IMG/VR virus record: IMGVR_UViG_3300043219_000566
Location: 62,001-126,000 of that record
Direction: 5' to 3' (one strand)
DNA: 64,000 bases
The position numbers and the translations under genes were made by a program. A model generated the notes under the pieces. That model was given only the letters and a program-made list of their open reading frames with translations. It was not told the DNA's origin and searched no databases. This document shows, one piece after another, positions 22,288-47,934 of the stretch. Numbering within the stretch: position 1 is the stretch's first letter; every line of letters starts with the position of its first letter.

Positions 22288-22578
22288 CTAGAATTCGCGC
22301 ATGCGTTTGCCCACATACACCTTGATCTTATCGGCCTTGAGCACTTTTTTCAGCTGGTTCATCTGTGCAGGCGACCAGCCCCGAATCATCGCTTTGAACT
22401 CCTGGATCGCCTTCGAGCGAGCGTGCGCCCGGTTCGACGAGCAGCGACAGCCCTTGCCGCCCTTGATCTTCTTGGCCGGTCCTCGCAGTTGCGGCAAAGC
22501 CGCTACGACGTCGGGGCGCTGTAACAAGCTGACCAGCACTCCATTGGTAAGAGTTGTCGTCCGAGGTCCTTTAGGCAT
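22288..22578 (-). CDS. Small basic protein with GCRC motif
   Basis: Lys/Arg-rich 96-aa ORF coupled to the upstream stop. Confidence 0.75.
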   Translation of the reverse strand: MPKGPRTTTLTNGVLVSLLQRPDVVAALPQLRGPAKKIKGGKGCRCSSNRAHARSKAIQEFKAMIRGWSPAQMNQLKKVLKADKIKVYVGKRMREF

Positions 22579-23464
22579 CTGGCGTTACTCGTTCCACCGT
22601 GATGTCGGTAACGCTATTTAAGTGAACTGCTAGAGCAGCCGCAAGTTGCTCGACCTCGTGCTGGATGTTTTCCCACCCCTCCTGCAGCAACTCGGTCCGC
22701 CTGGTGACGTAGTCGAAGGTGCGTTTGCGGTAGAACGGCGGCCACTGCGCCTCGTCTGCGGCCCCCGCCGGATAGTCCACCAGATCGCCCGGACTACATA
22801 CCGCAATCGGACGGCTCTTGGTCTCGCGCCCACGATCCGGCAGGTCGTCCCGCCACAAGAAGATCTTTGCATCGGTGCCGTCGGCCGAGCAAGTCACGCG
22901 CATGCGGTAACCAACCGGGCTATCTTCCGGATAGGCTGCGACTGCGTCGCGCTGTAGCACGAAACGTCGCGCGCCCTGTAGCGAACTGGACGAGTCCAGG
23001 GACGTTGCCCCAGGCGAGAAATCGTAGATCTTCATTTCAGCTGCGCGCAACGGAGCCAAGATGCCCAGCGCGTTCGCTAGTTTCTGGATATCGGACAGCA
23101 GCAACTCCCAGAACTGATCCATGATGGTTTCGTTCCGGAACGTCCAGCTGCCCTGGTTGCTGCGGTAGAACCCCGTCGCCGGATCGGGAGTGCTCTGGGG
23201 CCAGGTCTCCATGTCCAACGGGCTGCAGATGCCGATGAAGTGCGTACGGCCGTTGCCGTCGAGCTTGTAGAGCAAGACGTCGTGGTCGGTGCCGCTGATC
23301 GACGATGAGCTGGGAAACGAGATCGTGGAAGACGAGGACTCGATGCCTTCGATCGGGTCCCACTCGCCCGGCATCCCGACTCGCACGTCCATCCGCGTGC
23401 CGTATTCCTGCAGATTCAGCGACTCGGGAACGGCGACCATCTTGCGGACAGCGTAGTCAGGCAT
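22571..23464 (-). CDS. Protein made of two copies of an unrecognised ~100-aa domain with Ser-rich linkers
   Basis: Repeats FIGICSPLDM...FYR...W...I..LA and PIAVCSPGDL...FYR...W..I....LA. Confidence 0.8.
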   Translation of the reverse strand: MPDYAVRKMVAVPESLNLQEYGTRMDVRVGMPGEWDPIEGIESSSSTISFPSSSSISGTDHDVLLYKLDGNGRTHFIGICSPLDMETWPQSTPDPATGFYRSNQGSWTFRNETIMDQFWELLLSDIQKLANALGILAPLRAAEMKIYDFSPGATSLDSSSSLQGARRFVLQRDAVAAYPEDSPVGYRMRVTCSADGTDAKIFLWRDDLPDRGRETKSRPIAVCSPGDLVDYPAGAADEAQWPPFYRKRTFDYVTRRTELLQEGWENIQHEVEQLAAALAVHLNSVTDITVERVTPDA

Positions 23465-23466
23465 CG

Positions 23467-25470
23467 CTAGCCTCCCGCCGAAGACGAGCTGCAGACGCTG
23501 TCGGTGCGGTAGCTTACTACCAGCGCCGGGGCAAGCAGACTTATGCTGCCGTCACGTCGCGCGCCGGGATCAGAGACGACTTCTTGAATCCACAAGCCGA
23601 AGTACTCGTTGCCACCGTCCGGGTCGTAATGCCAACGATCGACGAAGAACTGCATCATCGCAGTGATATTGGGAGGCAAGCTTACCACGCCATTCTGGAT
23701 CGTCGCCGCCAGACGGTCCCAAATTACGCCGTTGCGCGCCACAGCTGGGTCATCGACCCCAGAGAACTGGTCGACTGGCAAGTACCCAGGCTTGTAGATG
23801 TCGCGCACACGCAGCACTGCGTCCTCGCCTGTCTCGGAGGTATGCGCCGTCAAGAGCAAAGCCGCGCTCAGAATATGGGCGCAGCGCGGGATTGCTAGCG
23901 GGAAGCGCAAGAACGCATCCCAGTACTCGCCCGGGTCCAGGTTTCGGCCGAAGCGAATGAAGCCCAGGTCGTTGAATACAGTCTGAGTGCCGTGTTGGTT
24001 GAAGCGTGTTGCCGCGTCCTTGGTGTGCTCCAGGTAAATTAACACGGAGAACAGATCTGGATCGACCCAGTCCGACGACGAAGACACCGGTGCCAGAGAC
24101 GATGACGACAACGCCAACGGCGGCGGCACCGCAGAGAACGACGAAGACGAAGAAGACGGTCCGAACACTGGAGCTACCGAAGATGATTCCACTTCGATTG
24201 GCTCCGGGGCCGTAAACGTCTCGCTGTCTACAAACGCTGCCACTCCGGCCCCGCCGCGCAACACAGCGCCTCTACCAACCACCGGCACGCCGAACTCTAC
24301 CATGTCCAACGAGAGCGTAGCGCACTGCTGCTGGATCTCCTTCCAGGCGCGATCCAACAAAGCTGTCGTAGGCGCGAAAATCTCGGCCTGGCTCGTACGG
24401 AAAGCAAACGGGAATTGCGGCCTGGGCGTATCCTCGGGGATCAAAGTCAGATCATTGATATCGGCTACTCTCCGAAAAACCCGCTTGCGCAGCGTGATCC
24501 CGGGGTACGGTCGGCTGATCTCGTGAACGAAGATCTTGTTGATCACGCCTGAAGTCGACGTGCAGGCGATCAGCATGCGGAATAGGCTGCCCTCGAATCC
24601 CACCTTGTCGCGCAAGTTACCTTGGTCTAAGCGCTCGACCGTGAACGACGGGACTATAGCTGGAGTGAGCGACGAAGATGAAAGGAAAAAGACGCAGTAG
24701 CTAAATCCTGGCACTGGCCTAACGACGGAGTCGCCGCCCCAGTAGAACAAGCTCAGATCGATCGAGTCGCTATTGAACGTGCCATTCCGCCCGTTACCGG
24801 ACTCGTCGGCAATCAGCGCAGTTGGTACTCCACCAGCGTGCTCAGTGGAGCCGTCCCCCATGCGCCACCAACCCTCCAAGAAGGCAGATTTGGTGTAGCT
24901 GCCAGAATCGTCATCCAGCATCAAGCCATCGGCACCGTTGTACAGCGCGACAGCTTGCGCGAAGCTTAGCGTTGTGCTCCAGATACCGACCTCGTCGATC
25001 CAGCCGTCGAATTCCGTTTCGCTGTCGAAAAGCGTGGTGGAACGCACCGCGCCGATGAGAACGTCAGCTGCCTGCATCGTCGTGCCGGTGTACGCGTTCG
25101 TGGCCGCTTGCTGCCCATCGACGAAGACCCAGAGCTGAGACGCGCTGAACGAGATAACGATGTGGTGCCACTCGGCGTCGTTGAGCACGATGCCGAGCAG
25201 CCCGCCGATGTTGTAGTTGAAGATCTCCCCGCCGATGTACACGTCCAAGTCGATAGCGTTGATCGAAAATCCGTACTGGCAGACATTTTTGAACCCCTTG
25301 GCAACGACCATGTAGCTGCCGTTACCCGCAGCCCCAGTTTTGATCCAAGCCTGCATCGACCAGCTGTTCAATCCGGGCTGGAAGTTAAAAGCCGAATGCG
25401 CACCGACGGTAACGTATTCGTTTTCCAGTATCCGGAACTGCCCGGCCCAACAGTTTTGCAATGCACCCAT
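23467..25470 (-). CDS. LamG (concanavalin-like) domain protein, probable tail or receptor-binding protein
   Basis: SMQAWIK...WHHIVISF...LWVFVDG...FDGWIDEVGIWSTTLS is the Laminin_G_3 signature; C-terminal AFLRFPL..IP...ILSAALLLT (DNRLRE-like); poly-Ser linkers. Confidence 0.8.
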   Translation of the reverse strand: MGALQNCWAGQFRILENEYVTVGAHSAFNFQPGLNSWSMQAWIKTGAAGNGSYMVVAKGFKNVCQYGFSINAIDLDVYIGGEIFNYNIGGLLGIVLNDAEWHHIVISFSASQLWVFVDGQQAATNAYTGTTMQAADVLIGAVRSTTLFDSETEFDGWIDEVGIWSTTLSFAQAVALYNGADGLMLDDDSGSYTKSAFLEGWWRMGDGSTEHAGGVPTALIADESGNGRNGTFNSDSIDLSLFYWGGDSVVRPVPGFSYCVFFLSSSSLTPAIVPSFTVERLDQGNLRDKVGFEGSLFRMLIACTSTSGVINKIFVHEISRPYPGITLRKRVFRRVADINDLTLIPEDTPRPQFPFAFRTSQAEIFAPTTALLDRAWKEIQQQCATLSLDMVEFGVPVVGRGAVLRGGAGVAAFVDSETFTAPEPIEVESSSVAPVFGPSSSSSSFSAVPPPLALSSSSLAPVSSSSDWVDPDLFSVLIYLEHTKDAATRFNQHGTQTVFNDLGFIRFGRNLDPGEYWDAFLRFPLAIPRCAHILSAALLLTAHTSETGEDAVLRVRDIYKPGYLPVDQFSGVDDPAVARNGVIWDRLAATIQNGVVSLPPNITAMMQFFVDRWHYDPDGGNEYFGLWIQEVVSDPGARRDGSISLLAPALVVSYRTDSVCSSSSAGG

Positions 25471-25473
25471 GGG

Positions 25474-25878
25474 CTAATCCACGATTACGAACCGTTCGCG
25501 TTTCTTGGCTGCTTTCCCGGCGTACGCCAGGACGACGCGCTGAAACGGCTTGCGCTTCGCCGCGCTGACGAAGCCGCGGAGTTTTTGCAACTCCTGCATT
25601 CTATCGTGGTCGTAGAGCCACAGGAAAATCTGAGCGAATCCGTCCAGTATCGAGGCCTGAGCACGTAGAGCCTTGAGCCCGTCGCACTTGGTGCAGTCCG
25701 TATTCAGCGCAGACCCATCGAGCCCCTTCTTCTGCATGAACGTAGCCAGTTCCGTAACCGACGACAGCAGCTGAGCGAACGCCGGGCAGTGCTTGTAGAA
25801 GCCCTTGTGTCCCAGCAACCAGAGCACGTTGCTCTTGTTGCACAGGAAATCATCACTCGACACCCGCGATGTTCTCAT
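25474..25878 (-). CDS. Small basic protein with CTKC motif
   Basis: ORF coupled between the glycosyltransferase and LamG genes. Confidence 0.7.
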   Translation of the reverse strand: MRTSRVSSDDFLCNKSNVLWLLGHKGFYKHCPAFAQLLSSVTELATFMQKKGLDGSALNTDCTKCDGLKALRAQASILDGFAQIFLWLYDHDRMQELQKLRGFVSAAKRKPFQRVVLAYAGKAAKKRERFVIVD

Positions 25879-27817
25879 TGTACCCACGGAGATTAGCGTC
25901 ACTGATCTTGACCCCCTGATACGCCTGCGCAACCCCGTAACCTTGCTGTTGCAGCGCTACGCCCATCCAGATGTCGCCGCCGCGATGCTTGATGCGCGGG
26001 TCAGGCCAATTGGCTGCCTGGATCGCGTCGCGGGTCACCAGCCAGAACCCGCCGGTGCAGAAGTCACTTTTGTCCATCGGCGGACGCTTGGTTTTGTCCT
26101 GGTGAAGCGGGCGACCAGCATACCACCCAGCCTGTTTCAGCCAGTCCCACTGGTTGCCGCGCAGGTGCCAGTAGTACACCTTCCCGAACATGTGGTAGCC
26201 CCGGGGATAACGCGCGTCCTGCTGCAAAAACATCTCATCGACCTTGCTGCCGAGATGCAGCAGCCAGTTGCGATCGACGACATGCGAGTCGTCGTCGAAC
26301 CACATGACCCAGTCGGTCGTCAGCGGAGCCTCGGAGTCGTGGAACATGCGCCGCATCATCGGGTACTTGAAGACCTGCGGCGCGGCCTCGTAGATCCGCT
26401 CGACGTTGGGCTTGTCCTCCAGGAACGCCAGCACCTGCTTACGCGCGTCTTTGGTCGGTTCGTTGAGCGCGTAGCGCAGCTTGAACAAGTTGACGTCGAA
26501 GTGCGCGTAGAGGCTGTTCAGACAACGCAGCGCCAGGTCGGAATGCTTGCCGTAGGTCAAGCCGCACACGGTAATCGGGAACGTCAGGTGCTTGAATTTC
26601 ACCTCGTCCGGGCGCAGCGGAACCGTCGGCTCGCTGGGCCGCTTGCTCGGGCGTGCCTGCTTCGCCTTGGTCTTGGCGATTACAGGATGAGGATCTTGCA
26701 CCGGAGCCGGAGTACCCGCGTTCGGCACCTTCACAATCAAGTCTCTGATCGACGGCATCTGGTTCTCTCCGCAAGCGTGCTTTTCGTATTCCAGAATACT
26801 CTCAACGACTCGATCTACTGTAATCATGTCGAGACAACGCGGCAAAGGCACTCGGGCAGGAGTGTAAACGACGTTGCTGCAATTCTGCTCGGGCTTGCCC
26901 TCGGTAACCCGTGTTCGCCAGCAACCATGGTTCTTGCAGCACTTCAACGCGCCGACGGTGTGCAGGAACTTATGCGGCATGAATGGATGATCTACGAACC
27001 GCGCATCTTGATCCGGGTGCCAAGCCTCCCACTGCTTGGGAGTACCCGGCGGCTTCTTGATCCTCCCGCTAGCAAACGCCATGTTGCGCTGCAACGTCTC
27101 GACGTTGTAAGCCTCCCAGGTGTAGTGCTCGCGCCCGCCTGCGATCACCACAGTCGGCTTGCCGATCGCGGCCGCCAGGTGCATGAAGCAGGTAACCGGC
27201 GTCAGGACACCGCGGGCGTGCAAGCAAAGCCGAAACGCCTCGCGCAAGCTGGTTTTGCCCACCATGCTAAGCGCGCCGTTGAGCGGCGGGTGGTAGTGCC
27301 GCGCGCCGCCGCCGCTGGGCTTTCCGCCGATCTGCACGAAGTTGACTACGCCCTCCAGTCGCTGAATGACCTCCTGGTAACGCGCAGCGTCCCACCATTT
27401 GGTGGTAAAGTCGGCCTTGCCGCCCGAGACAACTACCCAGTAGTCGCCCTCGATCAACGGCTCGTTCAGTTCTTGCGGGCTCCAGTGCAGGTCGGGACGG
27501 AACTCGGTCAGCCGCACCTTCAGGTTGAGTTTCTTGTTCAGATCGTCGATGAAGCCCTGGATAAAATGCAGTCCGCACTGATTGGACCTGTGGATTAGCG
27601 GGTAACCCAGCTTGATTACGTTGGTCGTCTTGCGCGCCAAGTTCGCGATATACGGGTTGTTTTCCCAGACCTCTTTTGCCGTCGTTTCGACGCCGGTGAC
27701 GTACTGGTTGGGGTAACACCGATGCAGATCACGCAGGACCACCGACATCATCATGACGTCGCCTGGTGCTTGCGTATTGCGAAAAATCAGCGACCGGGGA
27801 CTACGTGCGCGCCGCAT
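25853..27817 (-). CDS. Bifunctional glycosyltransferase: N-terminal GT9 (GT-B, heptosyltransferase-like) plus C-terminal GT2-like (GT-A)
   Basis: GT9: APGDVMM...LRDLHRCYP, VWENNPYI, KWW, VGKTSLRE, FMHLAAAIGKPTVVI. GT-A: VMWFDDDSHV (DxD), CTGGFWLV, GGDIWMG. GAGGGAG RBS before ATG 27817. Confidence 0.85.
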   Translation of the reverse strand: MRRARSPRSLIFRNTQAPGDVMMMSVVLRDLHRCYPNQYVTGVETTAKEVWENNPYIANLARKTTNVIKLGYPLIHRSNQCGLHFIQGFIDDLNKKLNLKVRLTEFRPDLHWSPQELNEPLIEGDYWVVVSGGKADFTTKWWDAARYQEVIQRLEGVVNFVQIGGKPSGGGARHYHPPLNGALSMVGKTSLREAFRLCLHARGVLTPVTCFMHLAAAIGKPTVVIAGGREHYTWEAYNVETLQRNMAFASGRIKKPPGTPKQWEAWHPDQDARFVDHPFMPHKFLHTVGALKCCKNHGCWRTRVTEGKPEQNCSNVVYTPARVPLPRCLDMITVDRVVESILEYEKHACGENQMPSIRDLIVKVPNAGTPAPVQDPHPVIAKTKAKQARPSKRPSEPTVPLRPDEVKFKHLTFPITVCGLTYGKHSDLALRCLNSLYAHFDVNLFKLRYALNEPTKDARKQVLAFLEDKPNVERIYEAAPQVFKYPMMRRMFHDSEAPLTTDWVMWFDDDSHVVDRNWLLHLGSKVDEMFLQQDARYPRGYHMFGKVYYWHLRGNQWDWLKQAGWYAGRPLHQDKTKRPPMDKSDFCTGGFWLVTRDAIQAANWPDPRIKHRGGDIWMGVALQQQGYGVAQAYQGVKISDANLRGYNENIAGVE

Positions 27818-27827: not shown

Positions 27828-28373
27828 TTACTTACCGCAGCTGGAACAGCCCTTGTGCGGCGATCCCGCAGCAGCAGAAGACAACGAGGCCAGTTGACGT
27901 GCGGCCAGACCGTGCACCAGCGTAGCCGCAGCAGCATAAGCTACCGCAGATAGCATCATTGCGAATAGATGTTGCCGCCCGTTGACCGCCAACCAGAGAA
28001 GCAGCGCAGTCCAGAAAAACTGACAAAACGAGCAGCTCGTGAAGTAAATCAGCATGCGCGTTTTCCACGTGATCTGCATCAAGCTGGAGAGATGCCGGTG
28101 CTTGTGTTCGAGCACCGAGGGCTCCAGCGGTATCCGCGCAGCGTTCATATCACCCTGCGCTGCCTCGGGGTTCCACAGTATCTTGTGGCGTAGCTCCCAT
28201 TGCAGCTGTCGGATCAAAGCAGCATCGGTCGTATTGCGCAGCCTGAACCAGCGCAACAGCTCCGTGGCTAAAAACGACTGGAATAAAACCTTGGTCGCTC
28301 CAAGCGTGACGAAGACCCAAACTATCAACGGAACGACCTGATCCATTCCGCGTACATCAAGAACACTCATCAT
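27828..28373 (-). CDS. DUF1360-like three-TM membrane protein with two CxxC motifs
   Basis: CSFCQFFW before the second TM helix, and C-terminal GCSSCGK. Confidence 0.75.
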   Translation of the reverse strand: MMSVLDVRGMDQVVPLIVWVFVTLGATKVLFQSFLATELLRWFRLRNTTDAALIRQLQWELRHKILWNPEAAQGDMNAARIPLEPSVLEHKHRHLSSLMQITWKTRMLIYFTSCSFCQFFWTALLLWLAVNGRQHLFAMMLSAVAYAAAATLVHGLAARQLASLSSAAAGSPHKGCSSCGK

Positions 28374-31600: not shown

Positions 31601-31857
31601 CCGCCCCACAGCGCGTACAGCAGCCCTTCGAGCTGCTCCATCGCTTTGGCGAATTGCCCACCCAGCGTTTCTTCCCAGTTGATCTCGTCCCCGCCCGCCG
31701 GAGGCGAGCCCGCCGGGAGAATGCGCTTGCCGGGGTGCATGTCCGACCACTTCATCGCGTAAGGCCGTTCAGCAACGTTCGGGTGAGCCAACCGCTCATC
31801 GATGTGCGAAGTGGTTCCGTACTGCGTGGGCTCCTCGAAGGTAACGTCGTGCGACAC
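28693..31857 (-). CDS. Large Cys/Trp/Gly-rich protein (1054 aa), probable tail fibre or receptor-binding protein
   Basis: About 40 Cys; Ig-like segment YSATIGPYSQGTEVNWYI; C-terminal GACC-type motif; located in the tail operon. Confidence 0.7.
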   Translation of the reverse strand: MSHDVTFEEPTQYGTTSHIDERLAHPNVAERPYAMKWSDMHPGKRILPAGSPPAGGDEINWEETLGGQFAKAMEQLEGLLYALWGGRPRYDTEPKQQWHARTHPRCLWGPESWEESPKPNPYSGGLVDCDYSDYAEATPTGYPPAPGGGKEYAAIGNVAPSCVGQHPLPQVPILPRSCDSGMALIGGEHNTTYFPPGSYGREEGSGGGGDPRADGEFGSEPDIFEVNGEEIRFHWSKPSGVATPSQVELVHDSEVTPMTGGPEYSATIGPYSQGTEVNWYIRIRVGGTWYYEPGGSSPPSHEQRHKVTWFTHYNPYGRGLPEMLNSCRKGTDRYYFDGSETIQPELLNMVRFTLSFIVGQTCGDQDLCGDIWEAQTIVHHNPRTRPSPTSNHGYCCMNMPIRWRWSGSAPWPQYIHGGKGEWGETGAGMDPIDEIEINPPPSPNPPGGAFRPTPISVTQPKPPAWDDVRPLHNHPDEPAHGSQRARKSWRGIDMLFRSGAPPPRSWVPNDPEAGPRNPFYGGGNSWEVMPSLFRCWYEPAVANSGRIFNRYAEVGLRPGDVIAPTHILEIINAVEYLITNGIWTQSTIKSRKRTPDTFMGLGCGHYHSYGANTIEQVETWTIDASHMCCEGYYQGFYMKVAENGEVVYEEWWPTLICDSWSRPSWSECWELHGGPAAGQCGMVAYRYSACEGFVSGTSFDEWTVHHNVFCNVGSTTGCGMSSRSRLCVGRNLETYECDAPLLHVYAEVRMEQVEGWSKFICTPARCVGGPDSNHGGPFRKARFDHEWLEGPFQVSTGTPGKEASGNCLGDMYGCGELFPAVGELGMWFHEVMGVYWEGLAQSWWDVVGTCRVCHNCCWSLAEVITWPPPVEVFGYDNPNPNASKPSLCETTRLGGLNFYYGPTHSNLGGMGSQACADGYVCECSVWMQPVCQGDRVWAATDLNLDGSGRAYRYFEGHENEFAGDLWLSTPYPDERPGIPTLRSYSLSPQGWQDYGSDCPCESWTNPLPCWSPDEQNMGACCVGASCFLVDGEGECDLMGGVWQGGTCSPYNPCE

Positions 31858-37166: not shown

Positions 37167-37984
37167 CCCTCTCCGAAGAAGAACATCCTGATCCCGTTCG
37201 GAATCGGGACAACTCGCAGCGCCGGTTCTTGCGCGTAATTCTCGATGTACCCGACTAAGAGCTGGACAGTCCCGGAACCATGCGGTCCGATATTCTCCTC
37301 GTCAAACTGGATTGTCTTGAGCAAGCGATCACGTTCTACCGGGGCACCTTCGGCTTCGCAGTCTCGGCGTACGAACAACGGATCGCCTACCACATCGACC
37401 CTGATGATCTCCTCCCAGCCGTGCCAGACGCCGAACTGACCACCCAACGACGAGGACGAGCCGTCCTGGTTCACAACGGTCAGCTGTACGCCGTTCTCGC
37501 CGACCAGGGGGACGTCGCCGTGAAAGATCTCGCCGGACTCCAGCCGCACGGTGCGTACGCAGGCTTGAGGCTGCGGTACAACCACCGTAGCTGCGAACCG
37601 CGTTTGTGGCATCTGGAAGGTGTAGGTCCCGTCGGGCCAGCCAGCGAGCTTGGACAACCCGCGGTCGCCCACCGGGTAGCCCAGCAAGCAACCTAGATAG
37701 ATCTCCCCGTCGGCGAAGAAATCGACCCAACTCGGTGGAGCATTGCGAGTGAAAGATCCGCTGCCGAGCGCCCCGCGTCCGTCGGACAAAGAGATTGTGA
37801 CCTGTTCGCCGACTTCGATAGACGCGATGAACAGATCGTGTCGTCCGCCCGGCGGGTAGAGACGCCCGTCGATAAAGACATCGTTCTCGATAGCAACCTG
37901 CCCGTTGGTGCGCGTAGCGCTAGGGTCAAACGGGTAGGCCGTATCGACGGACTCGTCATAATACGTTGGCAGCGTGACTCGCAT
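37163..37984 (-). CDS. Tail-associated protein, paralog family member 4
   Basis: DTAYPF; GDVPLVGENG. Confidence 0.75.
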   Translation of the reverse strand: MRVTLPTYYDESVDTAYPFDPSATRTNGQVAIENDVFIDGRLYPPGGRHDLFIASIEVGEQVTISLSDGRGALGSGSFTRNAPPSWVDFFADGEIYLGCLLGYPVGDRGLSKLAGWPDGTYTFQMPQTRFAATVVVPQPQACVRTVRLESGEIFHGDVPLVGENGVQLTVVNQDGSSSSLGGQFGVWHGWEEIIRVDVVGDPLFVRRDCEAEGAPVERDRLLKTIQFDEENIGPHGSGTVQLLVGYIENYAQEPALRVVPIPNGIRMFFFGEG

Positions 37985-41139: not shown

Positions 41140-42530
41140 CAACTACCGCCTTTGTTCGTGTTGCTGATCAGCTGCACGTTTGCCTGCAGCACGGAAGGCT
41201 CCGTGGCCGCGCATGCCAGCACCGAAGCGTCGATTTGCACATTAGCGTCCTCGACCCGGTCAGGACCGCTGACGCGCACCGAGAACGTGAACAGCTTGTA
41301 ATGCCCGCCTTTGATGGCAGAGTTGTCCACGAAAGTGTAAGTCCCGTCGCCGTTGTCAGTCGGGTCTACCTGCCCGTAGTTGTCCTGGGTGTTGTAGACC
41401 ATCCCGCTGCCAGGAACGTACTCGAACGTGTAGTCGCCGCCCGCGAACGAGATATCGACCGTCGCGCCTTCCTGCAGACAATCCTCCATGTTGCCGACCC
41501 AGACCTGGATAGTGACCAGCCAGCCAGTGAAGGCGTAGCCGAACAGCTGCGATACGCAACCTTCGCCCACGCACGCGACCCGCAGGTCCCATTCGGCCTT
41601 AGTAGTTTCGTAGGCCGCGAGCACGTCCGCCCAGATATCCTTGATAGCCAGGCCCTCATCCTTCAGCTGCCGGATGTGTTCCAGCAACTCAGAGAAATCG
41701 TCGCACTGACAGCAAGCCCGGCAGTCGTTGTGGATCTTGATCACGAAGGGCCGCGGCTCATTTCCGACGATGCGACGATGAATTCGGTAGCAGTCGTCAC
41801 CGGCGATAAAGAAGTTCCCCTCGTCACCAGCGATCTGATTGATCGTACGAATCTCGGCCAACGAACCGCCGCAATCCGTTTCGAGTTTGCCAGTACCCGC
41901 GCCAGGAATAGCGCTGATCTTGATCCTCCGAACGTCCGGGCGCAGCACAGACTTGGTTAAATCGCGCGCGGTAGTCAACGGCGTAGACGGGTCTACTTCG
42001 AGCTGGATATTGGTCCCCTCGATCAGCTCGCCGATCTCGCCCAGATTCACCCAAGTTCCGGCCGTAAGCCCGATGGAATTCACCCGGGCGGGTTGACGAC
42101 CGATGCAGCGAGGCACGAACTCCGGATAGGGCGAGGAGAACTCGATTGGCGAAGACGCGGTAGACAGCGGGCTGTAATCGTGATTCAAGACGAGCGTAAG
42201 TGCCAGACCTTCGTCCTCGTCGGTGTAAACCAGCACTCGGTAGTCGCCGATTACGCTGTTGGAAGTCGGCGTAACATCGAGAAGCGCGCCAGTTTCGGTG
42301 TTGTAGAGCACCAAGTCCCAGGACGACGCCGGGTCCAGGCTCACGAAGCGCCAATGATAATCGTGGTCCTCGTCGGCGTTGTCCGATCGAAAAGTCAGGT
42401 AGGCGTCCAGGAAAAACGGTCGGGGATCGTTGGCCTGGTAGGGCGCACTGAGAGTTAGGTCCGCGGCATCCGTAAACGGATACGCGCGGCTCTTGTTGCG
42501 CTCCAGCCACTCGCCTTCCATGCCCGGCAC
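41139..42530 (-). CDS. Tail-associated protein, paralog family member 2
   Basis: NKSRAYPF; LIEGTN; IRTINQIAGDEG; CRACCQC then a coiled coil. Confidence 0.8.
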   Translation of the reverse strand: MPGMEGEWLERNKSRAYPFTDAADLTLSAPYQANDPRPFFLDAYLTFRSDNADEDHDYHWRFVSLDPASSWDLVLYNTETGALLDVTPTSNSVIGDYRVLVYTDEDEGLALTLVLNHDYSPLSTASSPIEFSSPYPEFVPRCIGRQPARVNSIGLTAGTWVNLGEIGELIEGTNIQLEVDPSTPLTTARDLTKSVLRPDVRRIKISAIPGAGTGKLETDCGGSLAEIRTINQIAGDEGNFFIAGDDCYRIHRRIVGNEPRPFVIKIHNDCRACCQCDDFSELLEHIRQLKDEGLAIKDIWADVLAAYETTKAEWDLRVACVGEGCVSQLFGYAFTGWLVTIQVWVGNMEDCLQEGATVDISFAGGDYTFEYVPGSGMVYNTQDNYGQVDPTDNGDGTYTFVDNSAIKGGHYKLFTFSVRVSGPDRVEDANVQIDASVLACAATEPSVLQANVQLISNTNKGGS

Positions 42531-43671: not shown

Positions 43672-45498
43672 TCACGCCCCGTCGTAGATGGTGGCTACCA
43701 TGTTCACCACCGCTAGTTCTCCTGCGTAACTGTCGGAGTCCGAGCGCGTCACCCGGAACATCAACAACTGGTTGCTGCTGACTGGCACGTCTAAAGCCAG
43801 CTTGGCAAAGTAGTTACCGATATCCATCGCTCCGGCATCTTCCAGATCGAGCTGAGCCGCGGAAGAAAGCGAGGTCGGCAACGTCGGGAACGGGCTACCA
43901 GGATGCCCAGAAGACGACGACAACCCCACGAACTCCGTGTCGTTAATCAAGGCGTACTCGATAGTTACGCCCGCAGGCGGGGTACCCGCCGTCGGAGTAG
44001 CGAACCAGAGGTCCAGCTGCAACCGCGGCTGCGTCATCAAGACGTGCGGCACCCGCACCCGGCCGATGTAACTGGTCTCGCGGCCGCTGGGCAAACCGAC
44101 GTAGGGGAGAACCGACTGGTAAATGCTCTCAGACGCCCCAGAGAGCGCTACAAGGCCCACGTCGACCTTCCGCGACACTTGGGTCGGGTCGAGACCGTTA
44201 ATCGTCACAGACCCCGCAGAATAGCCGCCTGCGAGTATCTGTGACCCAGTCACGACCGCTAAACCGGTTCCGCGGATGCCTTCGACCATGTGACCGACCA
44301 GAAGATTCCCGTAACCGGTCACGTTCTTGACGACCTGCGAACCAGCCTGCCCGCCCGTACGATCCCAAGGCAGCTCGATGTCGAGGATGACCTTGCTCTG
44401 ACAGTAGCCCTCGGCGTCTGGAGACGCGCACCCGCTTACCACGAGCGGAGAGCCGTCGGCGGCCTTGATGCCCGTGACGGACGCCTGGGCGGTCTTGGAG
44501 ACCATCCGCGTGAACCAGAGCGTCAGACGCCGGTAGATCGACGCACACGGCGCGGGACGACCGGGCGCAGTGGTCCCGGACGAGGACGACGCGACCGGCG
44601 TGGACACTGAGCTGGAGATACAGGTGTCTTGCTCCCACGGAACGTCGGAATCGCAGCTGGTCATCCACCAGATACCGTTGCTGTCGATCAGAACGTGGTC
44701 CGGCGAGACCCCTGTGCCATTCAGATCCAGGTGAGCCCCGGACAGCGGCTGCGGGGGCCAGACGGCCGCAAGCAACGAGTTGCGGGTCCAGTTGTAGCCG
44801 AAGTACGCCCCGACCGGAGCTGTGTTGCCGAAGATCGGGTCAGCAGCCTCCAGCCAGCCCTCGCGCTCTGAGTCCCCGTGGACGATGTCGACTCGGCCGC
44901 TCTCCAGGCAGATCACCGTTCCGGCGGCTTCGGGCAGCAAGTCGAACTTGTAGTGAATGTGGTCTTCCAGCACCTCGCGGGGCGTCGGGTTGACGATCAA
45001 GCCGTCTTCGGTGACCTGCGCTACGTAGACCGCCGCTGCCGGGCGCGCTGATACCAGGCGGCCCTGGTCAACGGCGCTCAGCCAGTAGTGCCCCTCGGGC
45101 AGATCCGTGCCGCTGGCGTCCTGAACCGTCAGACCCTTGTACCGCCCGCGGATCAGGATATCGGCTGCCACGGCGCTCAGCTTGCGCGCTACGACGCCTA
45201 TCACGTAGCCCGAGTCTGCCAGCTTGAGCATGCCGTTGACGTCGTCGGTCGTGCTGGCGAGCGCGGGCTTGAACTGCTGGTCCGTTTCGTCGTAGTAGAC
45301 TGCCATATCGGCGCTGACTGCGGACGAGATCGCCTGGCTGAACAGGATCAACCCCTCGCCGATAGCCGAAGCGTCCAGGCGGTCCTTCAGATACTGCGTA
45401 CGCTCAGCAAGCTGCGTAACCGGCAGACCAACCGTCTGCTCGTTTACGTCATCGCCGTTGCGAATCATGCTGATGTTTTCACGCCAAGTCGATGCCAT
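43672..45498 (-). CDS. Tail fibre-like protein
   Basis: N-terminal GDDVNEQTVGLPVTQLAERTQYLK resembles myophage tail-fibre baseplate-attachment ends; follows the baseplate genes. Confidence 0.65.
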   Translation of the reverse strand: MASTWRENISMIRNGDDVNEQTVGLPVTQLAERTQYLKDRLDASAIGEGLILFSQAISSAVSADMAVYYDETDQQFKPALASTTDDVNGMLKLADSGYVIGVVARKLSAVAADILIRGRYKGLTVQDASGTDLPEGHYWLSAVDQGRLVSARPAAAVYVAQVTEDGLIVNPTPREVLEDHIHYKFDLLPEAAGTVICLESGRVDIVHGDSEREGWLEAADPIFGNTAPVGAYFGYNWTRNSLLAAVWPPQPLSGAHLDLNGTGVSPDHVLIDSNGIWWMTSCDSDVPWEQDTCISSSVSTPVASSSSGTTAPGRPAPCASIYRRLTLWFTRMVSKTAQASVTGIKAADGSPLVVSGCASPDAEGYCQSKVILDIELPWDRTGGQAGSQVVKNVTGYGNLLVGHMVEGIRGTGLAVVTGSQILAGGYSAGSVTINGLDPTQVSRKVDVGLVALSGASESIYQSVLPYVGLPSGRETSYIGRVRVPHVLMTQPRLQLDLWFATPTAGTPPAGVTIEYALINDTEFVGLSSSSGHPGSPFPTLPTSLSSAAQLDLEDAGAMDIGNYFAKLALDVPVSSNQLLMFRVTRSDSDSYAGELAVVNMVATIYDGA

Positions 45499-45509
45499 GG
45501 CTTATCTCA

Positions 45510-46109
45510 CTAGGTCCACGAGTGCGCGAAGATAACCGTCCACCGCAAACCGAAACCACCAGTAGCCGGTACAACCAGCGGGGCTCCCGGTGCCCAGGCG
45601 GCGTAGACCATGTCCTGGGTGTTGTCGTCCCAGTCCGGCGCGACGACCAGCGCCGCCATCTCGACGGCGTCGCCCGCGTTGAAAACCAGGCTGTTGGCCT
45701 CGCCGACATCCCCCGAAGCCGCGATCCCGGAGAAGACTATCTGGTTCGAGTTGTAGAGACCCGGATGCGCTACTTCCGTTGCGCTGGTAATGCCCTCACC
45801 CAGCCTTGTCCGAACGAAATCCAGCCCGGCCCCGAGATTGAGGAACTGAGCTGCCGTGATCTCGCGGCTGGCGACGCTGCGCCCGGTACCCGCTCCGCCG
45901 TCCTCGAACTGGAAGTACATCCCGTTGATGCCGACGCTCAACTCGCCGGACATGATCTTGCCCAACGCGTCGAAGCCTTCGTACTGCACCGTATTGTGCT
46001 CGCGCAGCAAAATGCGCTCACGACCGTGCTCGTCGATAGTGAACGCCTCGATCCGGCCGAGCACCAGTGGAGGTCGTGCGATCAAGTTCATAGCTGCATC
46101 CCTAATCAC
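45510..46109 (-). CDS. Baseplate/tail-associated protein
   Basis: Position after the baseplate wedge genes; HNTVQYEG motif. Confidence 0.6.
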   Translation of the reverse strand: MIRDAAMNLIARPPLVLGRIEAFTIDEHGRERILLREHNTVQYEGFDALGKIMSGELSVGINGMYFQFEDGGAGTGRSVASREITAAQFLNLGAGLDFVRTRLGEGITSATEVAHPGLYNSNQIVFSGIAASGDVGEANSLVFNAGDAVEMAALVVAPDWDDNTQDMVYAAWAPGAPLVVPATGGFGLRWTVIFAHSWT

Positions 46110-47934
46110 AATTCACTGCCGGATAGAAGACCGTCGGCTCCAGATCACCGAGGTATCCGTACAGCTCCGTAGCCGGGTCAATCACATCCTCGGTTGCCAA
46201 AGCATCCGCAACAGCCACCGCACACCCGGACGCGAACGATGACGATGACGACGACGTATTGTCGCCACACGCCGTTACGTCGGTGTGAACGCTGTCCGTT
46301 GTCTCAGCTTCAGCCTCTACCAGGAAGATGATTGCTTTGCCAGGCAGCAACGTGCTGCGCAGCAGCTCCAGCAATTCAAGTCCCAACGCGTCTTTACCGA
46401 AGCGCGTATAACGCAGGTATACCACAAGAGTGTTGTTGCGCAGAAAATGTTCGATGACCCAGCCCGCCGGGTTCACGTACGCCGGTGTGATTCCCAGCTG
46501 CTCCAGCCACGTCCGCCCGGCAGTAACGCCGTTGGCGTGTGCAGTAGACCAGAATAGAGCCACATCTTCGTCAGCGCCGTCCAACGGCACGACTTTCGCA
46601 TGCACCCGCCCGCCGCTGTCGACCGTCGCGGTATCGATGCTGCCAAGCTGGTTGCGGAAACCAAGCGATCCGTAGTAGCCGCTCCCGAGCAGCGCTCGGT
46701 TGATAGGCAAGGCCGTCAGCAACGGCATTTCGTTCACAGGCGGCTTGATCTTCGACGGTGAGCGTTGCCTGCTGTAGACCCGCTGCCGCGCGCCCGAAGA
46801 TGACGACGACTCGCCGGGAGTGTAGCGCGTTACGATTTGTCCCGTGTCGTCGACTCGAACTGCCTGTAGCAGCGCTACGATGTCGTCGTAATTGGCCAAG
46901 TCGAACACGCTGACCGTGTCGACCAGCGCTTGCCCCGCGTAAACCGTCTGTCCGATAGAGACGTTGGCCTGGCTCTGAGCCGGGTAGATGTAGCAGTGCT
47001 GATCGGTGCAGACGACGGTCTTGTAAGCGTAGCCCAAGACGCCCTCGACAACTTCCGAGGTCTCGCGCACCATCGGGATACCTACGATAGCAGCTAGTGC
47101 CCAATCGAGGTCCCGCGCACTCAACCCGCCCACGAATCCGTTCCATAGCGAGTTAATCAGATTCGCGTAGCTCTCCGAGCTGGCCAGCTTGCGCCGAATG
47201 ACGTAACCGTAATGCTCGTAGAGGTACTCCCAGTCCTCGTGCGAGTTGAACGCCCACAGCACAACCTCGCGGTCGGTGACGTTGCCACGGTCGTCCAAGA
47301 TGCTGGTCACGGTAAGTCGCGCGTCGTTGAACGGATCGTCCCGCAGATAGATCGAACCGTCTTCGACAAAAAAGTCGCTGCCGTTTACCCAAGCCAGCGT
47401 GGGATCGAGCATCCGGTTCAGAAGCACGCCGATGTGCTTGATATCTGTTAGATCCGCGGTGTGAAACTGATTGCCGACAGGGACGCCGTAGCGGTAGCTG
47501 CCGTCGTAGTACGCCCCGTCGCCGTACTTCAGCACCGCTGCCCGGCCAGTATCGATCTCGCTTTCCTTGATAACCAGCGCGTGCCAGATCCGGCGGTGAA
47601 AGATCGGGCACGAGAAACGACTAACGCAGGCGACAGCTTCCAGGTAGTCCAGATACGCCTGCAGAAATTGCTGCGAGTTGGCCCGCTCCAGCCCCAGCAG
47701 CTGCCCGCGATCCTCGAAGTGCCGCGACCAGAACGAACCCAGCGCCGCGACGATCGGCCAGCCAGTCGACATGTCTCCGCGGGGATGCTTCGGCAGAAAC
47801 GTGTTGCCCGACAGCGTGTACCCGGTCGGGGTCACCAGCAGAGTATCGTCCCTTTCCCGTGGAGGAAGCACAGTTTGCTCCTCGGGATCATGGGGGCCGT
47901 CCCACTGGAAAATGTCGTCGAGTGCGTCTCCCAT
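46102..47934 (-). CDS. Probable baseplate wedge protein
   Basis: Immediately downstream of baseplate J; 610 aa; Ser tracts. Confidence 0.6.
   Translation of the reverse strand: MGDALDDIFQWDGPHDPEEQTVLPPRERDDTLLVTPTGYTLSGNTFLPKHPRGDMSTGWPIVAALGSFWSRHFEDRGQLLGLERANSQQFLQAYLDYLEAVACVSRFSCPIFHRRIWHALVIKESEIDTGRAAVLKYGDGAYYDGSYRYGVPVGNQFHTADLTDIKHIGVLLNRMLDPTLAWVNGSDFFVEDGSIYLRDDPFNDARLTVTSILDDRGNVTDREVVLWAFNSHEDWEYLYEHYGYVIRRKLASSESYANLINSLWNGFVGGLSARDLDWALAAIVGIPMVRETSEVVEGVLGYAYKTVVCTDQHCYIYPAQSQANVSIGQTVYAGQALVDTVSVFDLANYDDIVALLQAVRVDDTGQIVTRYTPGESSSSSGARQRVYSRQRSPSKIKPPVNEMPLLTALPINRALLGSGYYGSLGFRNQLGSIDTATVDSGGRVHAKVVPLDGADEDVALFWSTAHANGVTAGRTWLEQLGITPAYVNPAGWVIEHFLRNNTLVVYLRYTRFGKDALGLELLELLRSTLLPGKAIIFLVEAEAETTDSVHTDVTACGDNTSSSSSSFASGCAVAVADALATEDVIDPATELYGYLGDLEPTVFYPAVNCD

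What the first reader, a model, noticed from the sequence alone, without database searches (positions are those of the whole stretch)
22571..46812. Candidate virion O-glycosylation system: GT9+GT2 fusion co-transcribed with at least nine structural proteins carrying poly-serine tracts
Seen: short Ser runs (about 3-7 residues) recur in the genes at 22571, 23467, 33070, 35342, 36243, 37163, 38242, 43672 and 46102 (e.g. GPSSSSSSF, QGSSSSSTRGSSSSAAGS, NTSSSSSSF). They are essentially absent from the accessory genes, tube, hub and baseplate J. They use mixed codons (TCT/TCG in one tract, AGC/AGT/TCG in another), which points to protein-level selection rather than slippage. A two-domain glycosyltransferase (25853..27817) sits inside the same operon. 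Established: some mycobacteriophages O-glycosylate virion proteins on Ser using their own glycosyltransferases. Inference: the Ser tracts are glycan acceptor sites and the GT-B + GT-A fusion builds a glycan coat on the tail apparatus; GT9 normally transfers ADP-heptose-type sugars in LPS core synthesis.
Basis: partly seen in the sequence, partly recalled or inferred. Interest (0 to 1): 0.78.

Follow-up and report, generated by a model that had tools for sequence, protein, structure and literature searches.

The report
Poly-serine virion proteins beside a phage glycosyltransferase
An uncultivated 216-kb marine-sediment phage has short, strongly conserved serine runs in its tail, baseplate and neck proteins and a two-domain sugar-transferring enzyme in the same operon, but whether the enzyme puts sugars on those serines is plausible and unproven, because close cousins keep the enzyme without the serine runs.

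Summary
In the whole 216.5-kb phage genome, ORFs of the structural module (window about 22.5-70.5 kb) carry 31 runs of four or more Ser, against 0.64 expected. The rest of the genome has 3 against 3.0 expected. Codons are mixed. The runs sit at the same alignment positions in relatives whose GC ranges from 40 to 60%, so selection acts on the protein.

The gene at 25853-27817(-) is a real GT9 (GT-B) + GT-A fusion. It lies in one long minus-strand operon that ends at strong terminators near 20.4 kb.

More than 150 IMG/VR jumbo-phage contigs carry this enzyme in the same baseplate/fibre operon. In several it sits next to mucin-like fibre proteins with 21-53% Ser or with Thr runs.

The link between enzyme and tracts is not obligatory. 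Complete relatives keep the GT and have no Ser-run excess. Phages with identical or near-identical GTs differ in whether they have Ser/Thr-rich fibres. GT9-less relatives form a single clade, so the co-occurrence test has no power.

Verdict: virion O-glycosylation on Ser tracts is the best single explanation (about 0.4). Unmodified poly-Ser spacers are a close rival.

The parts
20434..20465 (-). Strong intrinsic-terminator hairpin, first of four between 19.4 and 20.5 kb, marking the end of the long minus-strand structural operon
   Evidence: 12-bp stem with 11 GC pairs and a T tract. No comparably strong minus-strand terminator lies between 38.9 kb and here.
20549..21292 (-). 247-aa protein, last gene of the operon and the most conserved neighbour of the GT
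   Evidence: Homologues found in 67 of 85 GT-centred loci. No Pfam hit.
22571..23464 (-). 297-aa virion-module protein with three SSSS tracts (23327-23338, 23300-23311, 22982-22993)
   Evidence: Its C-terminal domain occurs as a separate about 160-aa ORF just after the GT in distant relatives, often beginning with a Ser-rich stretch.
23467..25470 (-). 667-aa Laminin_G_3 (concanavalin-like lectin) fibre-type protein with six Ser tracts
   Evidence: PF13385 E 8.9e-15. PHROG 'virion structural protein' hits. SSSS at residues 264-267 is invariant in 5 relatives with GC 40-60%; tracts in the 429-466 linker and at the C-terminus are retained. In the weak AF2 model the tracts fall in unstructured segments between domains.
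25474..25932 (-). Small ORF (about 140-150 aa) just downstream of and overlapping the GT
   Evidence: Conserved in 7 close loci. No family hit.
25853..27817 (-). 654-aa two-domain glycosyltransferase: N-terminal GT9 (GT-B), disordered linker, C-terminal GT-A with a DDD motif
   Evidence: PF01075 42 bits against a cut-off of 22. AF2 pLDDT 89.9. VIA Z 20.1 to 3TOV, 18.7 to WaaF, 17.3 to TibC, and about 15 to GT-A enzymes. Invariant DDD 487-489 and a Cys/His cluster at 261-307. Start codon set.
27828..28373 (-). 181-aa small protein with hydrophobic, membrane-like segments, immediately upstream of the GT
   Evidence: Sequence read. Homologues only in the closest relatives. No Pfam or PHROG hit.
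28693..31857 (-). 1054-aa protein without any Ser run; present in some relatives and absent in L001
33070..35325 (-). 751-aa protein with S5 near the N-terminus and two S3 tracts
   Evidence: Homologues in 13 loci.
35342..36295 (-). 317-aa protein (phrog_8198) with SSS at the C-terminus
   Evidence: E 4.7e-38.
36243..37166 (-). 307-aa protein with an S5 tract at 36627-36641
   Evidence: The tract is retained in L001, L002 and L008. Homologues in 37 loci.
37163..37984 (-). 273-aa protein with SSSS at 37448-37459
   Evidence: Homologues in 34 loci. G001-G003 have no run at this position.
38242..41142 (-). 966-aa protein with six S4-S7 tracts in residues 540-667 and one S3
   Evidence: The conserved N-terminal half is found in 36 loci. 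The tract-bearing C-terminal half is missing in G001-G003. The G005 homologue carries (S6-8 + W/D/N/Y)n arrays.
43672..45498 (-). 608-aa protein with three Ser tracts
   Evidence: Tracts lie at the same alignment positions in G004 and G005 and fall in gaps of G001-G003.
46102..47934 (-). 610-aa protein with S5 and S6 tracts, next to baseplate J
47935..49593 (-). Baseplate J-like protein with no Ser run; anchors the module as baseplate
   Evidence: PF04865 E 2.2e-7.
49598..50089 (-). Baseplate wedge (gp25-like) protein with no Ser run
   Evidence: phrog_43 E 1.8e-5.
63046..64000 (-). C-terminal part of a 943-aa conserved virion protein that runs off the window to 65877. Its SSSS at residue 411 lies beyond the window end.
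   Evidence: The run is shared with G004 and G005 and falls in a gap in G001 and G003.

Best explanation
The window is the late structural module of an uncultivated jumbo myovirus-like phage from marine sediment. Its peripheral virion proteins (lectin-like fibre proteins, outer baseplate proteins and small neck/head-proximal proteins) carry short homopolymeric Ser cassettes. These sit at loop insertions, domain boundaries and protein termini.

The most likely function of the cassettes is attachment of O-linked sugars in the infected cell's cytoplasm before or during assembly. The GT9 domain of the operon-encoded fusion enzyme would add the first sugar, probably a heptose from a nucleotide-heptose donor, to Ser hydroxyls, as TibC/AAH do on autotransporters. 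The GT-A domain, with its DDD motif, would extend the glycan. A second GT cluster elsewhere in the genome may add further sugars.

Shown: the tracts, their conservation, the enzyme's folds and motifs, and its fixed place in the fibre operon of more than 150 relatives.

Inferred: that the acceptor is protein, that the tracts are the sites, and the identity of the sugar.

The GT predates the tracts. In relatives without tracts it must use other acceptors, so the tracts would be lineage-specific, high-density acceptor cassettes rather than the enzyme's defining substrate.
For: - The tracts are confined to the virion module: 31 vs 0.64 expected there, 3 vs 3.0 elsewhere.
- Selection acts on the protein: codons are mixed, and 47 of 60 ortholog-by-tract cells keep S3+ at the aligned site although identity is only 28-66% and GC ranges 40-60%.
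- The GT sits in one terminator-free operon with these genes.
- It occupies the same baseplate/fibre operon in more than 80 fetched IMG/VR loci, out of 155 tblastn-confirmed.
- The GT9 domain is about as close in fold to the protein Ser-heptosyltransferase TibC (Z 17.3) as to WaaF/WaaC (18.7/16.5).
- It scores far below the NCBIfam cut-offs for LPS heptosyltransferases: 22 against 134.6 bits.
- The 'GD' and K-x-W motifs are kept, as is the DDD motif of the GT-A domain.
- Bacterial copies are not in LPS clusters.
- In other lineages, mucin-like proteins lie 1-3 genes upstream of the GT. They have 21-53% Ser, (SSSSx)n repeats, or Thr runs mixed with Pro/Ala between Cys-rich modules (L020, L045, L081, L060).
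- Other glycan-type genes abut the GT in relatives: Methyltransf_24, an MptE-like (PF01973) domain protein and a second GT9.
- The genome holds further GTs, a weak GmhA-like SIS protein and a sulfotransferase.
- Precedents exist: TibC/AAH (PMC4358343), serine-rich repeat glycoproteins (PMC7661464, PMC6973325) and mycobacteriophage virion glycosylation (ref. 80 of PMC12582341).
Against: - There is no direct evidence of any glycan.
- Complete relatives carry the GT in the same operon without any Ser-run excess (G001-G003).
- L059/L060 share an identical GT9 domain and L014/L081/L020 near-identical ones, yet each group differs in having S/T-rich fibres.
- On the GT9 tree the tract trait changes at least 9 times.
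- GT9-less relatives form one clade, so their lack of tracts carries no weight.
- Many tracts lie about 40 kb from the GT, in head-proximal genes.
- Poly-Ser linkers occur in marine bacteria with no demonstrated glycosylation (PMC2386152).
- All relatives, with or without tracts, are rich in GTs.
- Jumbo-phage GT clusters have been read in the literature as host-surface modification (PMC7824862).
Confidence: 0.4

Rival explanations
1. The Ser tracts are unmodified hydrophilic spacers, either poly-Ser linkers or short loop cassettes. They give flexibility or solubility at domain boundaries and exposed turns of fibre, baseplate and neck proteins. The neighbouring GT has another job, and its proximity is a coincidence of both being in the fibre region.
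For: - Tracts sit at indel-prone positions, domain boundaries and termini.
- In the LamG model they fall between folded domains.
- Tract length and number change quickly between relatives, up to long arrays.
- The GT persists without tracts.
- Poly-Ser linkers are a known 'dialect' of marine polysaccharide-degrading bacteria (PMC2386152), and this phage comes from marine sediment.
Against: - Most tracts in this genome are only 4-7 Ser and are directly flanked by hydrophobic or aromatic residues, unlike typical long linkers.
- SSSS at LamG 264-267 is invariant while its flanks vary.
- The tracts are homopolymeric rather than a G/S/P/T mix.
- Non-virion multidomain proteins of the same genome show no excess.
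- The hyper-Ser/Thr proteins cluster right beside the GT in several lineages.
Confidence: 0.33
2. The GT9+GT-A enzyme, together with the other GTs of the genome, modifies a non-protein target. Candidates are the host's LPS core or surface polysaccharide (superinfection exclusion, or preventing adsorption to debris) or phage DNA. The Ser tracts would be unrelated to it.
For: - The GT9 C-lobe is most similar in sequence to WaaF/WaaC.
- A small membrane-like protein lies just upstream.
- The second GT cluster is interleaved with ThyX, dTMP kinase and a nucleoside-deoxyribosyltransferase-like gene.
- Iyer et al. interpret jumbo-phage GT clusters as surface-polysaccharide modification (PMC7824862).
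- The GT is kept by phages without tracts.
Against: - The fusion gene has a fixed position inside the late baseplate/fibre operon across more than 150 divergent contigs, which is unlike seroconversion or DNA-modification genes.
- It fails the LPS heptosyltransferase equivalog cut-offs by a wide margin.
- Bacterial homologues are not in LPS loci.
- The membrane-like neighbour is not conserved beyond close relatives.
Confidence: 0.17
3. The Ser tracts receive a different modification, such as phosphorylation or sulfation, or they bind metal or mineral surfaces. The GT is not involved.
For: A sulfotransferase-family gene is present in the genome. Poly-Ser stretches are phosphorylated in some eukaryotic proteins (the vitellogenin linker papers listed). 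The habitat is sediment.
Against: No kinase was found near the tracts. The sulfotransferase is absent from the tract-bearing relatives G004 and G005. Nothing links it to the structural operon.
Confidence: 0.07
4. The runs are a DNA-level artefact: trinucleotide slippage, a nucleotide motif, or mis-called reading frames.
For: TCG is over-represented in runs (42% vs 26%), and some runs are (TCR)n-like. Long arrays in G005 and L045 look like tandem expansions.
Against: - Codons mix TCN and AGY within single runs.
- The same positions are Ser runs in relatives with 40-60% GC.
- No matching excess of Arg or Val runs appears, as the other frames would give.
- The ORFs are long, co-oriented and tightly packed.
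Confidence: 0.03

Closest known systems
Bacterial autotransporter heptosyltransferases (BAHT: TibC, AAH)
   Same: Both have a GT-B catalytic domain of GT9 type. The model aligns to TibC 4RAP residues 112-391 at Z 17.3. TibC is a cytoplasmic enzyme that puts heptose on Ser of a surface protein encoded next to it (PMC4358343). Both have a Cys-rich insertion in the C-lobe.
   Different: There is no counterpart of TibC's N-terminal beta-barrel. The Cys pattern differs (H-x3-H-x6-CC-x4-C-x13-C-x14-C against C339/342/358/370). This enzyme is fused to a GT-A domain. No sequence-level hit to TibC was found. The candidate acceptors are homopolymeric Ser runs, not beta-helix repeats. Activity is untested.
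LPS core heptosyltransferases WaaC/WaaF/WaaQ (GT9)
   Same: Pfam PF01075 is above its cut-off. These are the best sequence and fold matches (1PSW E 3.9e-7, Z 18.7). The GD and K-x-W motifs are kept.
   Different: The enzyme scores 22 bits against equivalog cut-offs of 134-467. It is fused to a GT-A domain, encoded in a phage fibre operon, and its bacterial homologues lie outside LPS clusters.
Mycobacteriophage virion O-glycosylation (Che8-type; Freeman et al. 2023)
   Same: Phage-encoded glycosyltransferases are proposed or shown to decorate virion proteins.
   Different: The phage lineage, host type and enzyme families are all different. Here the enzyme is a GT9+GT-A fusion inside the tail operon. 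The candidate acceptors are internal poly-Ser cassettes in many tail, baseplate and neck proteins. Nothing has been shown experimentally. I could not read that paper here, and it is cited through PMC12582341.
Serine-rich repeat glycoproteins of Gram-positive bacteria (Fap1, GspB, SRRPs)
   Same: Both involve Ser-dominated repeat regions in fibre-like surface proteins encoded beside dedicated cytoplasmic GTs, including two-domain GTs (PMC5207161, PMC7661464). The arrays in G005, L020 and L045 resemble SRR regions.
   Different: There is no GtfA/GtfB (GT4) pair next to the tracts and no accessory Sec system. In this window the tracts are short (4-7) and scattered over many proteins.
Poly-serine linkers (PSL) of marine carbohydrate-degrading bacteria
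   Same: Both are homopolymeric Ser stretches encoded with mixed codons and placed between modules of lectin/CBM-containing proteins in marine organisms (PMC2386152).
   Different: The PSLs tabulated in PMC2386152 run to 25-58 residues and occur in secreted enzymes. Here most tracts are 4-7 residues, many are flanked by hydrophobic residues, and they are restricted to virion proteins.

Membership tests
Glycosyltransferase family 9 (Pfam PF01075) | Profile match above the curated gathering score | tested here: met
   42 bits against a cut-off of 22, residues 173-280 of the 694-aa ORF. PF01075 is precomputed on nearly all of the 120 listed homologues.
Glycosyltransferase family 9 (Pfam PF01075) | GT-B fold with two Rossmann-like lobes | tested here: met
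   AF2 model residues 1-328, pLDDT about 90 or higher. Z 20.1 to 3TOV, 18.7 to 1PSW, 16.5 to 2H1F.
Glycosyltransferase family 9 (Pfam PF01075) | N-terminal G-D motif and C-lobe K-x-W / G-x-T...MH-x-AAA nucleotide-sugar-binding motifs | tested here: met
   APGD is present at the true N-terminus. The TKvW and GkTSL...MHlAAA blocks align to WaaF/WaaC. That the Asp of the G-D motif is the catalytic base comes from my own knowledge of WaaC, not from a test here.
Glycosyltransferase family 9 (Pfam PF01075) | Uses ADP-heptose as donor | not testable with these tools
   The only indirect hint is a weak GmhA-like SIS protein in the genome: 23 bits against a cut-off of 265; PF13580 26.5 against 27.
LPS heptosyltransferase I/II/III (WaaC/WaaF/WaaQ equivalogs) | NCBIfam equivalog score above the curated cut-off | tested here: not met
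   Best hit TIGR02195 at 22.1 bits against 134.6; the others are lower.
LPS heptosyltransferase I/II/III (WaaC/WaaF/WaaQ equivalogs) | Encoded in an LPS core (waa) gene cluster | tested here: not met
   The gene lies in a phage baseplate/fibre operon. The bacterial homologues P0097 and P0051 lie next to a kinase/sigma-factor gene and a transposase, not waa genes.
BAHT family (TibC/AAH) | GT-B catalytic domain of TibC type | tested here: met
   Z 17.3, rmsd 3.1 over 248 residues to 4RAP chain residues 112-391. This is no closer than the match to the LPS enzymes.
BAHT family (TibC/AAH) | N-terminal flattened beta-barrel (TibC residues 1-97) | tested here: not met
   The model's residue 1 aligns to TibC residue 112. 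No extra N-terminal domain is present.
BAHT family (TibC/AAH) | Four-Cys iron finger inserted in the C-lobe; dodecamer | tested here: inconclusive
   Invariant C272, C273, C278, C292 and C307 and near-invariant H261 and H265 lie in the C-lobe. Their spacing differs from TibC's C339/342/358/370 (PMC4358343). Metal binding and oligomeric state are not testable here.
BAHT family (TibC/AAH) | Transfers heptose to Ser of a protein substrate | not testable with these tools
   Requires biochemistry.
GT-A fold inverting/retaining transferases (GT2-like) | GT-A fold with a DxD motif | tested here: met
   Residues 382-633 score Z 13-15 to SpsA, BcsA, HAS and ppGalNAc-T. DDD 487-489 is invariant in 46 sequences.
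GT-A fold inverting/retaining transferases (GT2-like) | Pfam PF00535/PF13641 match above cut-off on this protein | tested here: not met
   No GT2 family was reported for the window protein at E <= 0.01, but many homologues carry PF00535 or PF13641. The domain is a divergent GT-A, so the 'GT2' label is approximate.
Phage virion glycosylation systems | Glycan demonstrated on virion proteins and dependent on phage GTs | not testable with these tools
   The sequence is a metagenomic contig from marine sediment. No isolate and no proteomics are available.
Phage virion glycosylation systems | Presence of acceptor tracts co-varies with the GT across relatives | tested here: inconclusive
   Tracts were seen only in GT9-bearing genomes, but many GT9-bearing genomes lack them. 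GT9 loss maps to one clade, giving one independent contrast.
Serine-rich repeat glycoprotein systems | GtfA/GtfB pair and accessory Sec export | tested here: not met
   No such genes were seen in the operon. The single GT4-like gene lies about 90 kb away. This is an analogy only.
Poly-serine linkers | Long homopolymeric Ser stretch separating folded modules | tested here: inconclusive
   Some tracts lie between domains (LamG 429-466). Relatives have runs up to 22 Ser. Most tracts in the window are 4-7 Ser flanked by hydrophobic residues.

The most novel reading that the evidence does not exclude
A large, uncultivated family of about 200-kb phages found in marine-sediment and other metagenomes makes mucin-like O-glycoprotein fibres. 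A fibre-operon enzyme whose GT9 domain is a protein Ser/Thr O-heptosyltransferase, evolved independently of the autotransporter BAHTs, primes Ser/Thr cassettes. Its fused GT-A domain, with additional phage GTs, extends the glycan. The cassettes expand, contract and are swapped between lineages as evolvable glycan-density modules on the virion surface.
Probability: 0.25. Interest if true: 0.8.

Novelty: new variant of a known kind. Interest (0 to 1): 0.55.

Why it matters
Virion glycosylation by phage-encoded enzymes has so far been documented mainly in mycobacteriophages and, among other viruses, in giant eukaryotic viruses. If the link holds, it would show a second, unrelated enzymatic route: a GT9+GT-A fusion fixed in the tail-fibre operon, present in hundreds of environmental jumbo phages. 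It would extend protein Ser-heptosylation beyond enterobacterial autotransporters. It would also give a sequence-readable marker, Ser/Thr cassettes, for glycan-coated virion surfaces. That bears on phage stability, adsorption to particles or mucus, and immune or protease shielding.

Even if the tracts are unmodified, two things remain unexplained features of this phage family: a 50-fold, position-conserved poly-Ser enrichment restricted to peripheral virion proteins, and a GT conserved inside a baseplate operon.

Tried and rejected
- Close relatives in deposited phage genomes: none. megablast of 20 kb and tblastn of the GT found nothing. Baseplate J gave only 22-24% hits to Vibrio and Salmonella phages.
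- Pfam and PHROGs on about 45 proteins of the module: almost all blank.
- DNA-level explanation of the runs: rejected.
- Co-occurrence test. Whole genomes of 8 relatives were fetched, and GT presence was checked in 21 more records. GT9 loss is a single event on the major-head-protein tree, so independent contrasts have no power.
- A gene that tracks the tract-bearing genomes. A phyletic profile gave 9 genes present in G004 and G005 only, including a MoxR AAA+/VWA pair and one GT2, none convincing. The second GT cluster is shared with G004 only. GT richness is family-wide.
- The search for related loci with the most conserved GT neighbour failed because it has no conserved stretch.
- AF2 of the LamG protein from 5 sequences gave pLDDT 46, too weak to place the tracts in 3D.
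- The ESM Atlas look-up of the 966-aa protein was uninformative.
- Sequence comparison to TibC found no hit even with a profile. Only fold similarity was found.
- A weak hit of the GT-A domain to the S/O-glycosyltransferase ThuS (7MSK, E 0.42) was not pursued, as it is not significant.
- Cys enrichment upstream of the tracts (11 of 31 vs 5.3 expected) led me to consider thioether or S-glycosylation ideas. The enrichment is better explained by Cys-rich modules that alternate with S/T linkers in relatives.
- Host identification was not attempted beyond the sample type.

Full report
**What the window is.** The 64-kb window is bases 62001-126000 of a single 216,501-bp virus contig with 59.7% GC. 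The only public sequencing run found to hold it is labelled a marine sediment metagenome.

Almost all genes from about 64 kb down to 20.5 kb lie on the minus strand with tiny gaps. In the scanned stretch (19.0-38.9 kb), no strong minus-strand terminator lies upstream of a cluster of GC-rich hairpins at 20465-19416. Recognisable markers are:
- baseplate J at 47935-49593 (PF04865);
- a gp25-like wedge protein at 49598-50089 (phrog_43);
- a weak VgrG-type DUF2345 signal in 59605-62433;
- a Laminin_G_3 'virion structural protein' at 23467-25470;
- the large terminase on the plus strand at 7717-9912;
- just beyond the window, the major head protein and the head protease.

Most other proteins match no Pfam or PHROG family. 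There is no near relative among deposited phages.

**The observation.** I count 28 runs of three or more Ser and 20 of four or more, and the quoted examples are present.

Genome-wide, S4+ runs number 31 in ORFs of genome 84-133 kb, against 0.64 expected from shuffling each protein. Elsewhere they number 3 against 3.04 expected. No other amino acid behaves like this.

Single runs mix TCN and AGY codons.

Inner components have no run of four or more Ser: baseplate J, the wedge protein, the 1242-aa protein, the VgrG-like protein and the GT.

**Selection acts on the protein.** Six close relatives were recovered through the GT (L001-L004, L008, L009). Their GC ranges from 40 to 57%, and their orthologues are only 28-66% identical. 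They keep a run of three or more Ser at the aligned site in 47 of 60 ortholog-by-tract cells.

In the LamG protein, SSSS at residues 264-267 is invariant while its flanks vary. The 429-466 linker and the C-terminal tract are retained. A DNA-level origin is therefore rejected.

Compared with more distant genomes, tracts lie in small insertions, at domain boundaries or at termini. The only structural model I could make of a tract protein was poor (pLDDT 46). It places the tracts in unstructured segments between folded domains.

**The enzyme.**
- Pfam finds GT9 at 42 bits against a cut-off of 22.
- A 46-sequence alignment shows an invariant DDD and a Cys/His cluster at 261-307.
- The AF2 model (pLDDT 89.9) has two domains joined by a disordered linker at 341-375.
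- Residues 1-328 are a GT-B fold. The best matches are a Veillonella GT9 (Z 20.1), WaaF (18.7), the protein Ser-heptosyltransferase TibC (17.3) and WaaC (16.5).
- Residues 382-633 are a GT-A fold, Z about 15.
- The protein scores far below the NCBIfam cut-offs for LPS heptosyltransferases.
- Its rare bacterial homologues do not lie in LPS clusters.

The 'GT9 + GT2-like fusion' label is therefore correct. The enzyme is a distinct GT9 subfamily, not an LPS-core orthologue and not a BAHT member: it has no N-terminal beta-barrel and a different Cys pattern (PMC4358343).

**The family.** More than 700 homologues exist in the protein database, many on contigs of 170-260 kb. In IMG/VR, 155 stretches encode it, and 80 loci were fetched.

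In these loci the GT is flanked by homologues of the window's genes at 20549 (67 loci), 22571 (44), 36243 (37), 37163 (34) and 38242 (36). Its place in the baseplate/fibre operon is therefore ancient.

The slot just upstream is hypervariable and encodes fibre-type proteins:
- a collagen-repeat protein (L056);
- Cys/Trp-rich modular proteins with Ser linkers (L024, L034);
- proteins with 21-53% Ser or (SSSSx)n arrays (L020, L045, L081, L005);
- a protein with Ser and Thr runs mixed with Pro/Ala between Cys-rich modules (L060).

In other loci the neighbours are a Methyltransf_24 enzyme, an MptE-like (PF01973) domain protein or a second GT9. The Pfam family PF01973 also covers Maf-type flagellin glycosylation proteins; that reading is from my own knowledge.

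**The co-occurrence test.** S4+ runs, observed against expected, in whole genomes:

| Genome | GT status | S4+ runs (observed vs expected) | Note |
|---|---|---|---|
| G000 | GT9 fusion | 34 vs 3.7 | the window's genome |
| G004 | GT9 fusion | 14 vs 2.2 | |
| G005 | GT9 and GT-A domains in separate ORFs | 51 vs 4.1 | long (S6-8 + W/D/N/Y)n arrays |
| G001 | GT9 fusion | 7 vs 2.9 | scattered |
| G002 | GT9 fusion | 1 vs 2.4 | |
| G003 | GT9 fusion | 0 vs 1.5 | |
| G010 | no GT match | 3 vs 1.6 | |
| G016 | no GT match | 2 vs 1.5 | |
| G011 | GT2-only paralogue | 7 vs 1.5 | scattered, outside the structural module |

So 'GT without tracts' is common. On the GT9 tree the tract trait changes at least 9 times. 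L059 and L060 share an identical GT9 domain, and L014, L081 and L020 have near-identical ones, yet each group differs in having S/T-rich fibres.

'Tracts without GT' was not seen. However, all GT9-less genomes fall in one clade of the head-protein tree, whose GT-bearing neighbours also lack tracts. That gives one independent contrast and no power.

It shows that the enzyme does not need the tracts. It does not show that the tracts are not used by the enzyme.

**Further glycan genes.** Outside the window, at genome 176-187 kb, the phage encodes:
- two clear GT2s and one weak GT2;
- a second GT9;
- a GT4-type enzyme;
- a sulfotransferase;
- a SIS protein whose best but very weak matches are GmhA.

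These are interleaved with ThyX, dTMP kinase and a nucleoside-deoxyribosyltransferase-like gene. This cluster is shared only with G004. All five relatives examined for GT families (G001-G005) are GT-rich whether or not they have tracts. Iyer et al. read such jumbo-phage clusters as host-surface modification (PMC7824862), which keeps that rival alive.

**Weighing.** A GT fixed in a fibre operon for this long is most simply an enzyme that matures fibre or baseplate proteins. Several lines fit O-glycosylation of exposed Ser/Thr cassettes:
- the fold kinship to TibC;
- the failure of the LPS-orthologue tests;
- mucin-like neighbours in several lineages, with Ser and Thr interchangeable;
- restriction of the tracts to peripheral virion proteins.

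Against this stand the absence of any direct evidence, the many tract-less GT-bearing relatives, and the known existence of unglycosylated poly-Ser linkers in marine bacteria (PMC2386152).

If true, it is a new variant of a known kind (phage virion glycosylation), with an enzyme architecture and acceptor style not described before. Two of my literature searches bear on this: one combining phage, heptosyltransferase, tail fiber and glycosylated found nothing, and a broader one on bacteriophage virion glycosylation (42 papers) listed nothing comparable.

Noticed in passing
genome 176.3-187 kb (locus L260:6292-16982; window-equivalent 114.3-125 kb, outside the window): A second glycan-gene cluster: two clear GT2s and one weak GT2, a 302-aa GT9, a GT4-type enzyme, a sulfotransferase and a weak GmhA-like SIS protein. 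They are interleaved with ThyX, dTMP kinase and a DUF4406/nucleoside-deoxyribosyltransferase-like gene. The cluster is syntenic in G004 only. It could serve glycan extension, host-surface modification or DNA modification.
   Followed up: partly
window 3129-4628 (-) and 5335-6582 (-): A VWA-like DUF2201 protein and a MoxR-type AAA_5 ATPase form a pair. It is present in the tract-bearing relatives G004 and G005 and was not detected in G001-G003.
   Followed up: partly
window 20053-20076 and 19416-19439 (-): Two nearly identical terminator hairpins (GC(C/T)(T/C)CGGACCG(T/A)CGGGTCCGGGGC followed by TTGTTTTTTG) lie about 640 bp apart. Two further strong hairpins lie at 20434-20465 and 20098-20127. 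This looks like a repeated terminator element at the operon end.
   Followed up: no
L006:4790-8510 (-) = window-equivalent 66.8-70.5 kb: Several small proteins between the tail genes and the major head protein carry Ser tracts near a terminus. Three of them (the 114-, 95- and 133-aa proteins) share a C-terminal motif P-C-x6-7-SSSS-hydrophobic-W/F. The 133-aa protein is 20% Ser, with tracts at both ends.
   Followed up: partly
window 38242-41142 (-) residues 530-680; L024:7860-9863; L034:8043-9749; L060:4991-7336: Ser/Thr tracts alternate with Cys- and Trp-rich modules (for example W-x-W-C-P-C ... G-P-P ... G-R-F-Y-G-E). Cys lies within 12 residues upstream of 11 of the 31 tracts, against 5.3 expected. 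This is an unclassified repeated fibre module.
   Followed up: partly
G005 (L136-L138), e.g. genome 66481-68982, 97750-100023, 100772-102415: Long arrays of S6-8 punctuated by single W, D, N or Y residues occur in homologues of the window's structural proteins. One 833-aa protein is 16% Ser and 14% Cys. In this genome the GT9 and GT-A domains are separate ORFs.
   Followed up: partly
window 27828-28373 (-): A small protein with apparent transmembrane segments and a C-terminal CSSCGK lies directly upstream of the GT. It is replaced in other clades by an unrelated about 177-aa Cys-rich soluble protein with a conserved motif (WDP-x-G-x-GTQLKKLL...CSCN).
   Followed up: partly
window 28693-31857 (-): A 1054-aa protein without a single Ser run is inserted between the fibre genes and the GT. 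It is present in L002-L004, L008 and L009 and absent from L001.
   Followed up: no
L056:7041-9569 (+): A collagen triple-helix repeat fibre protein with PCPQ-type repeats sits in the variable slot upstream of the GT in a tract-less relative.
   Followed up: no
G001, G002, G003, G006-G009, G011-G018, G020-G023: A stand-alone paralogue of the fusion's GT-A domain (matches in open frames of about 236-360 aa) is present elsewhere in many relatives, including those that lack the GT9 domain. It is absent from G000, G004 and G005.
   Followed up: partly
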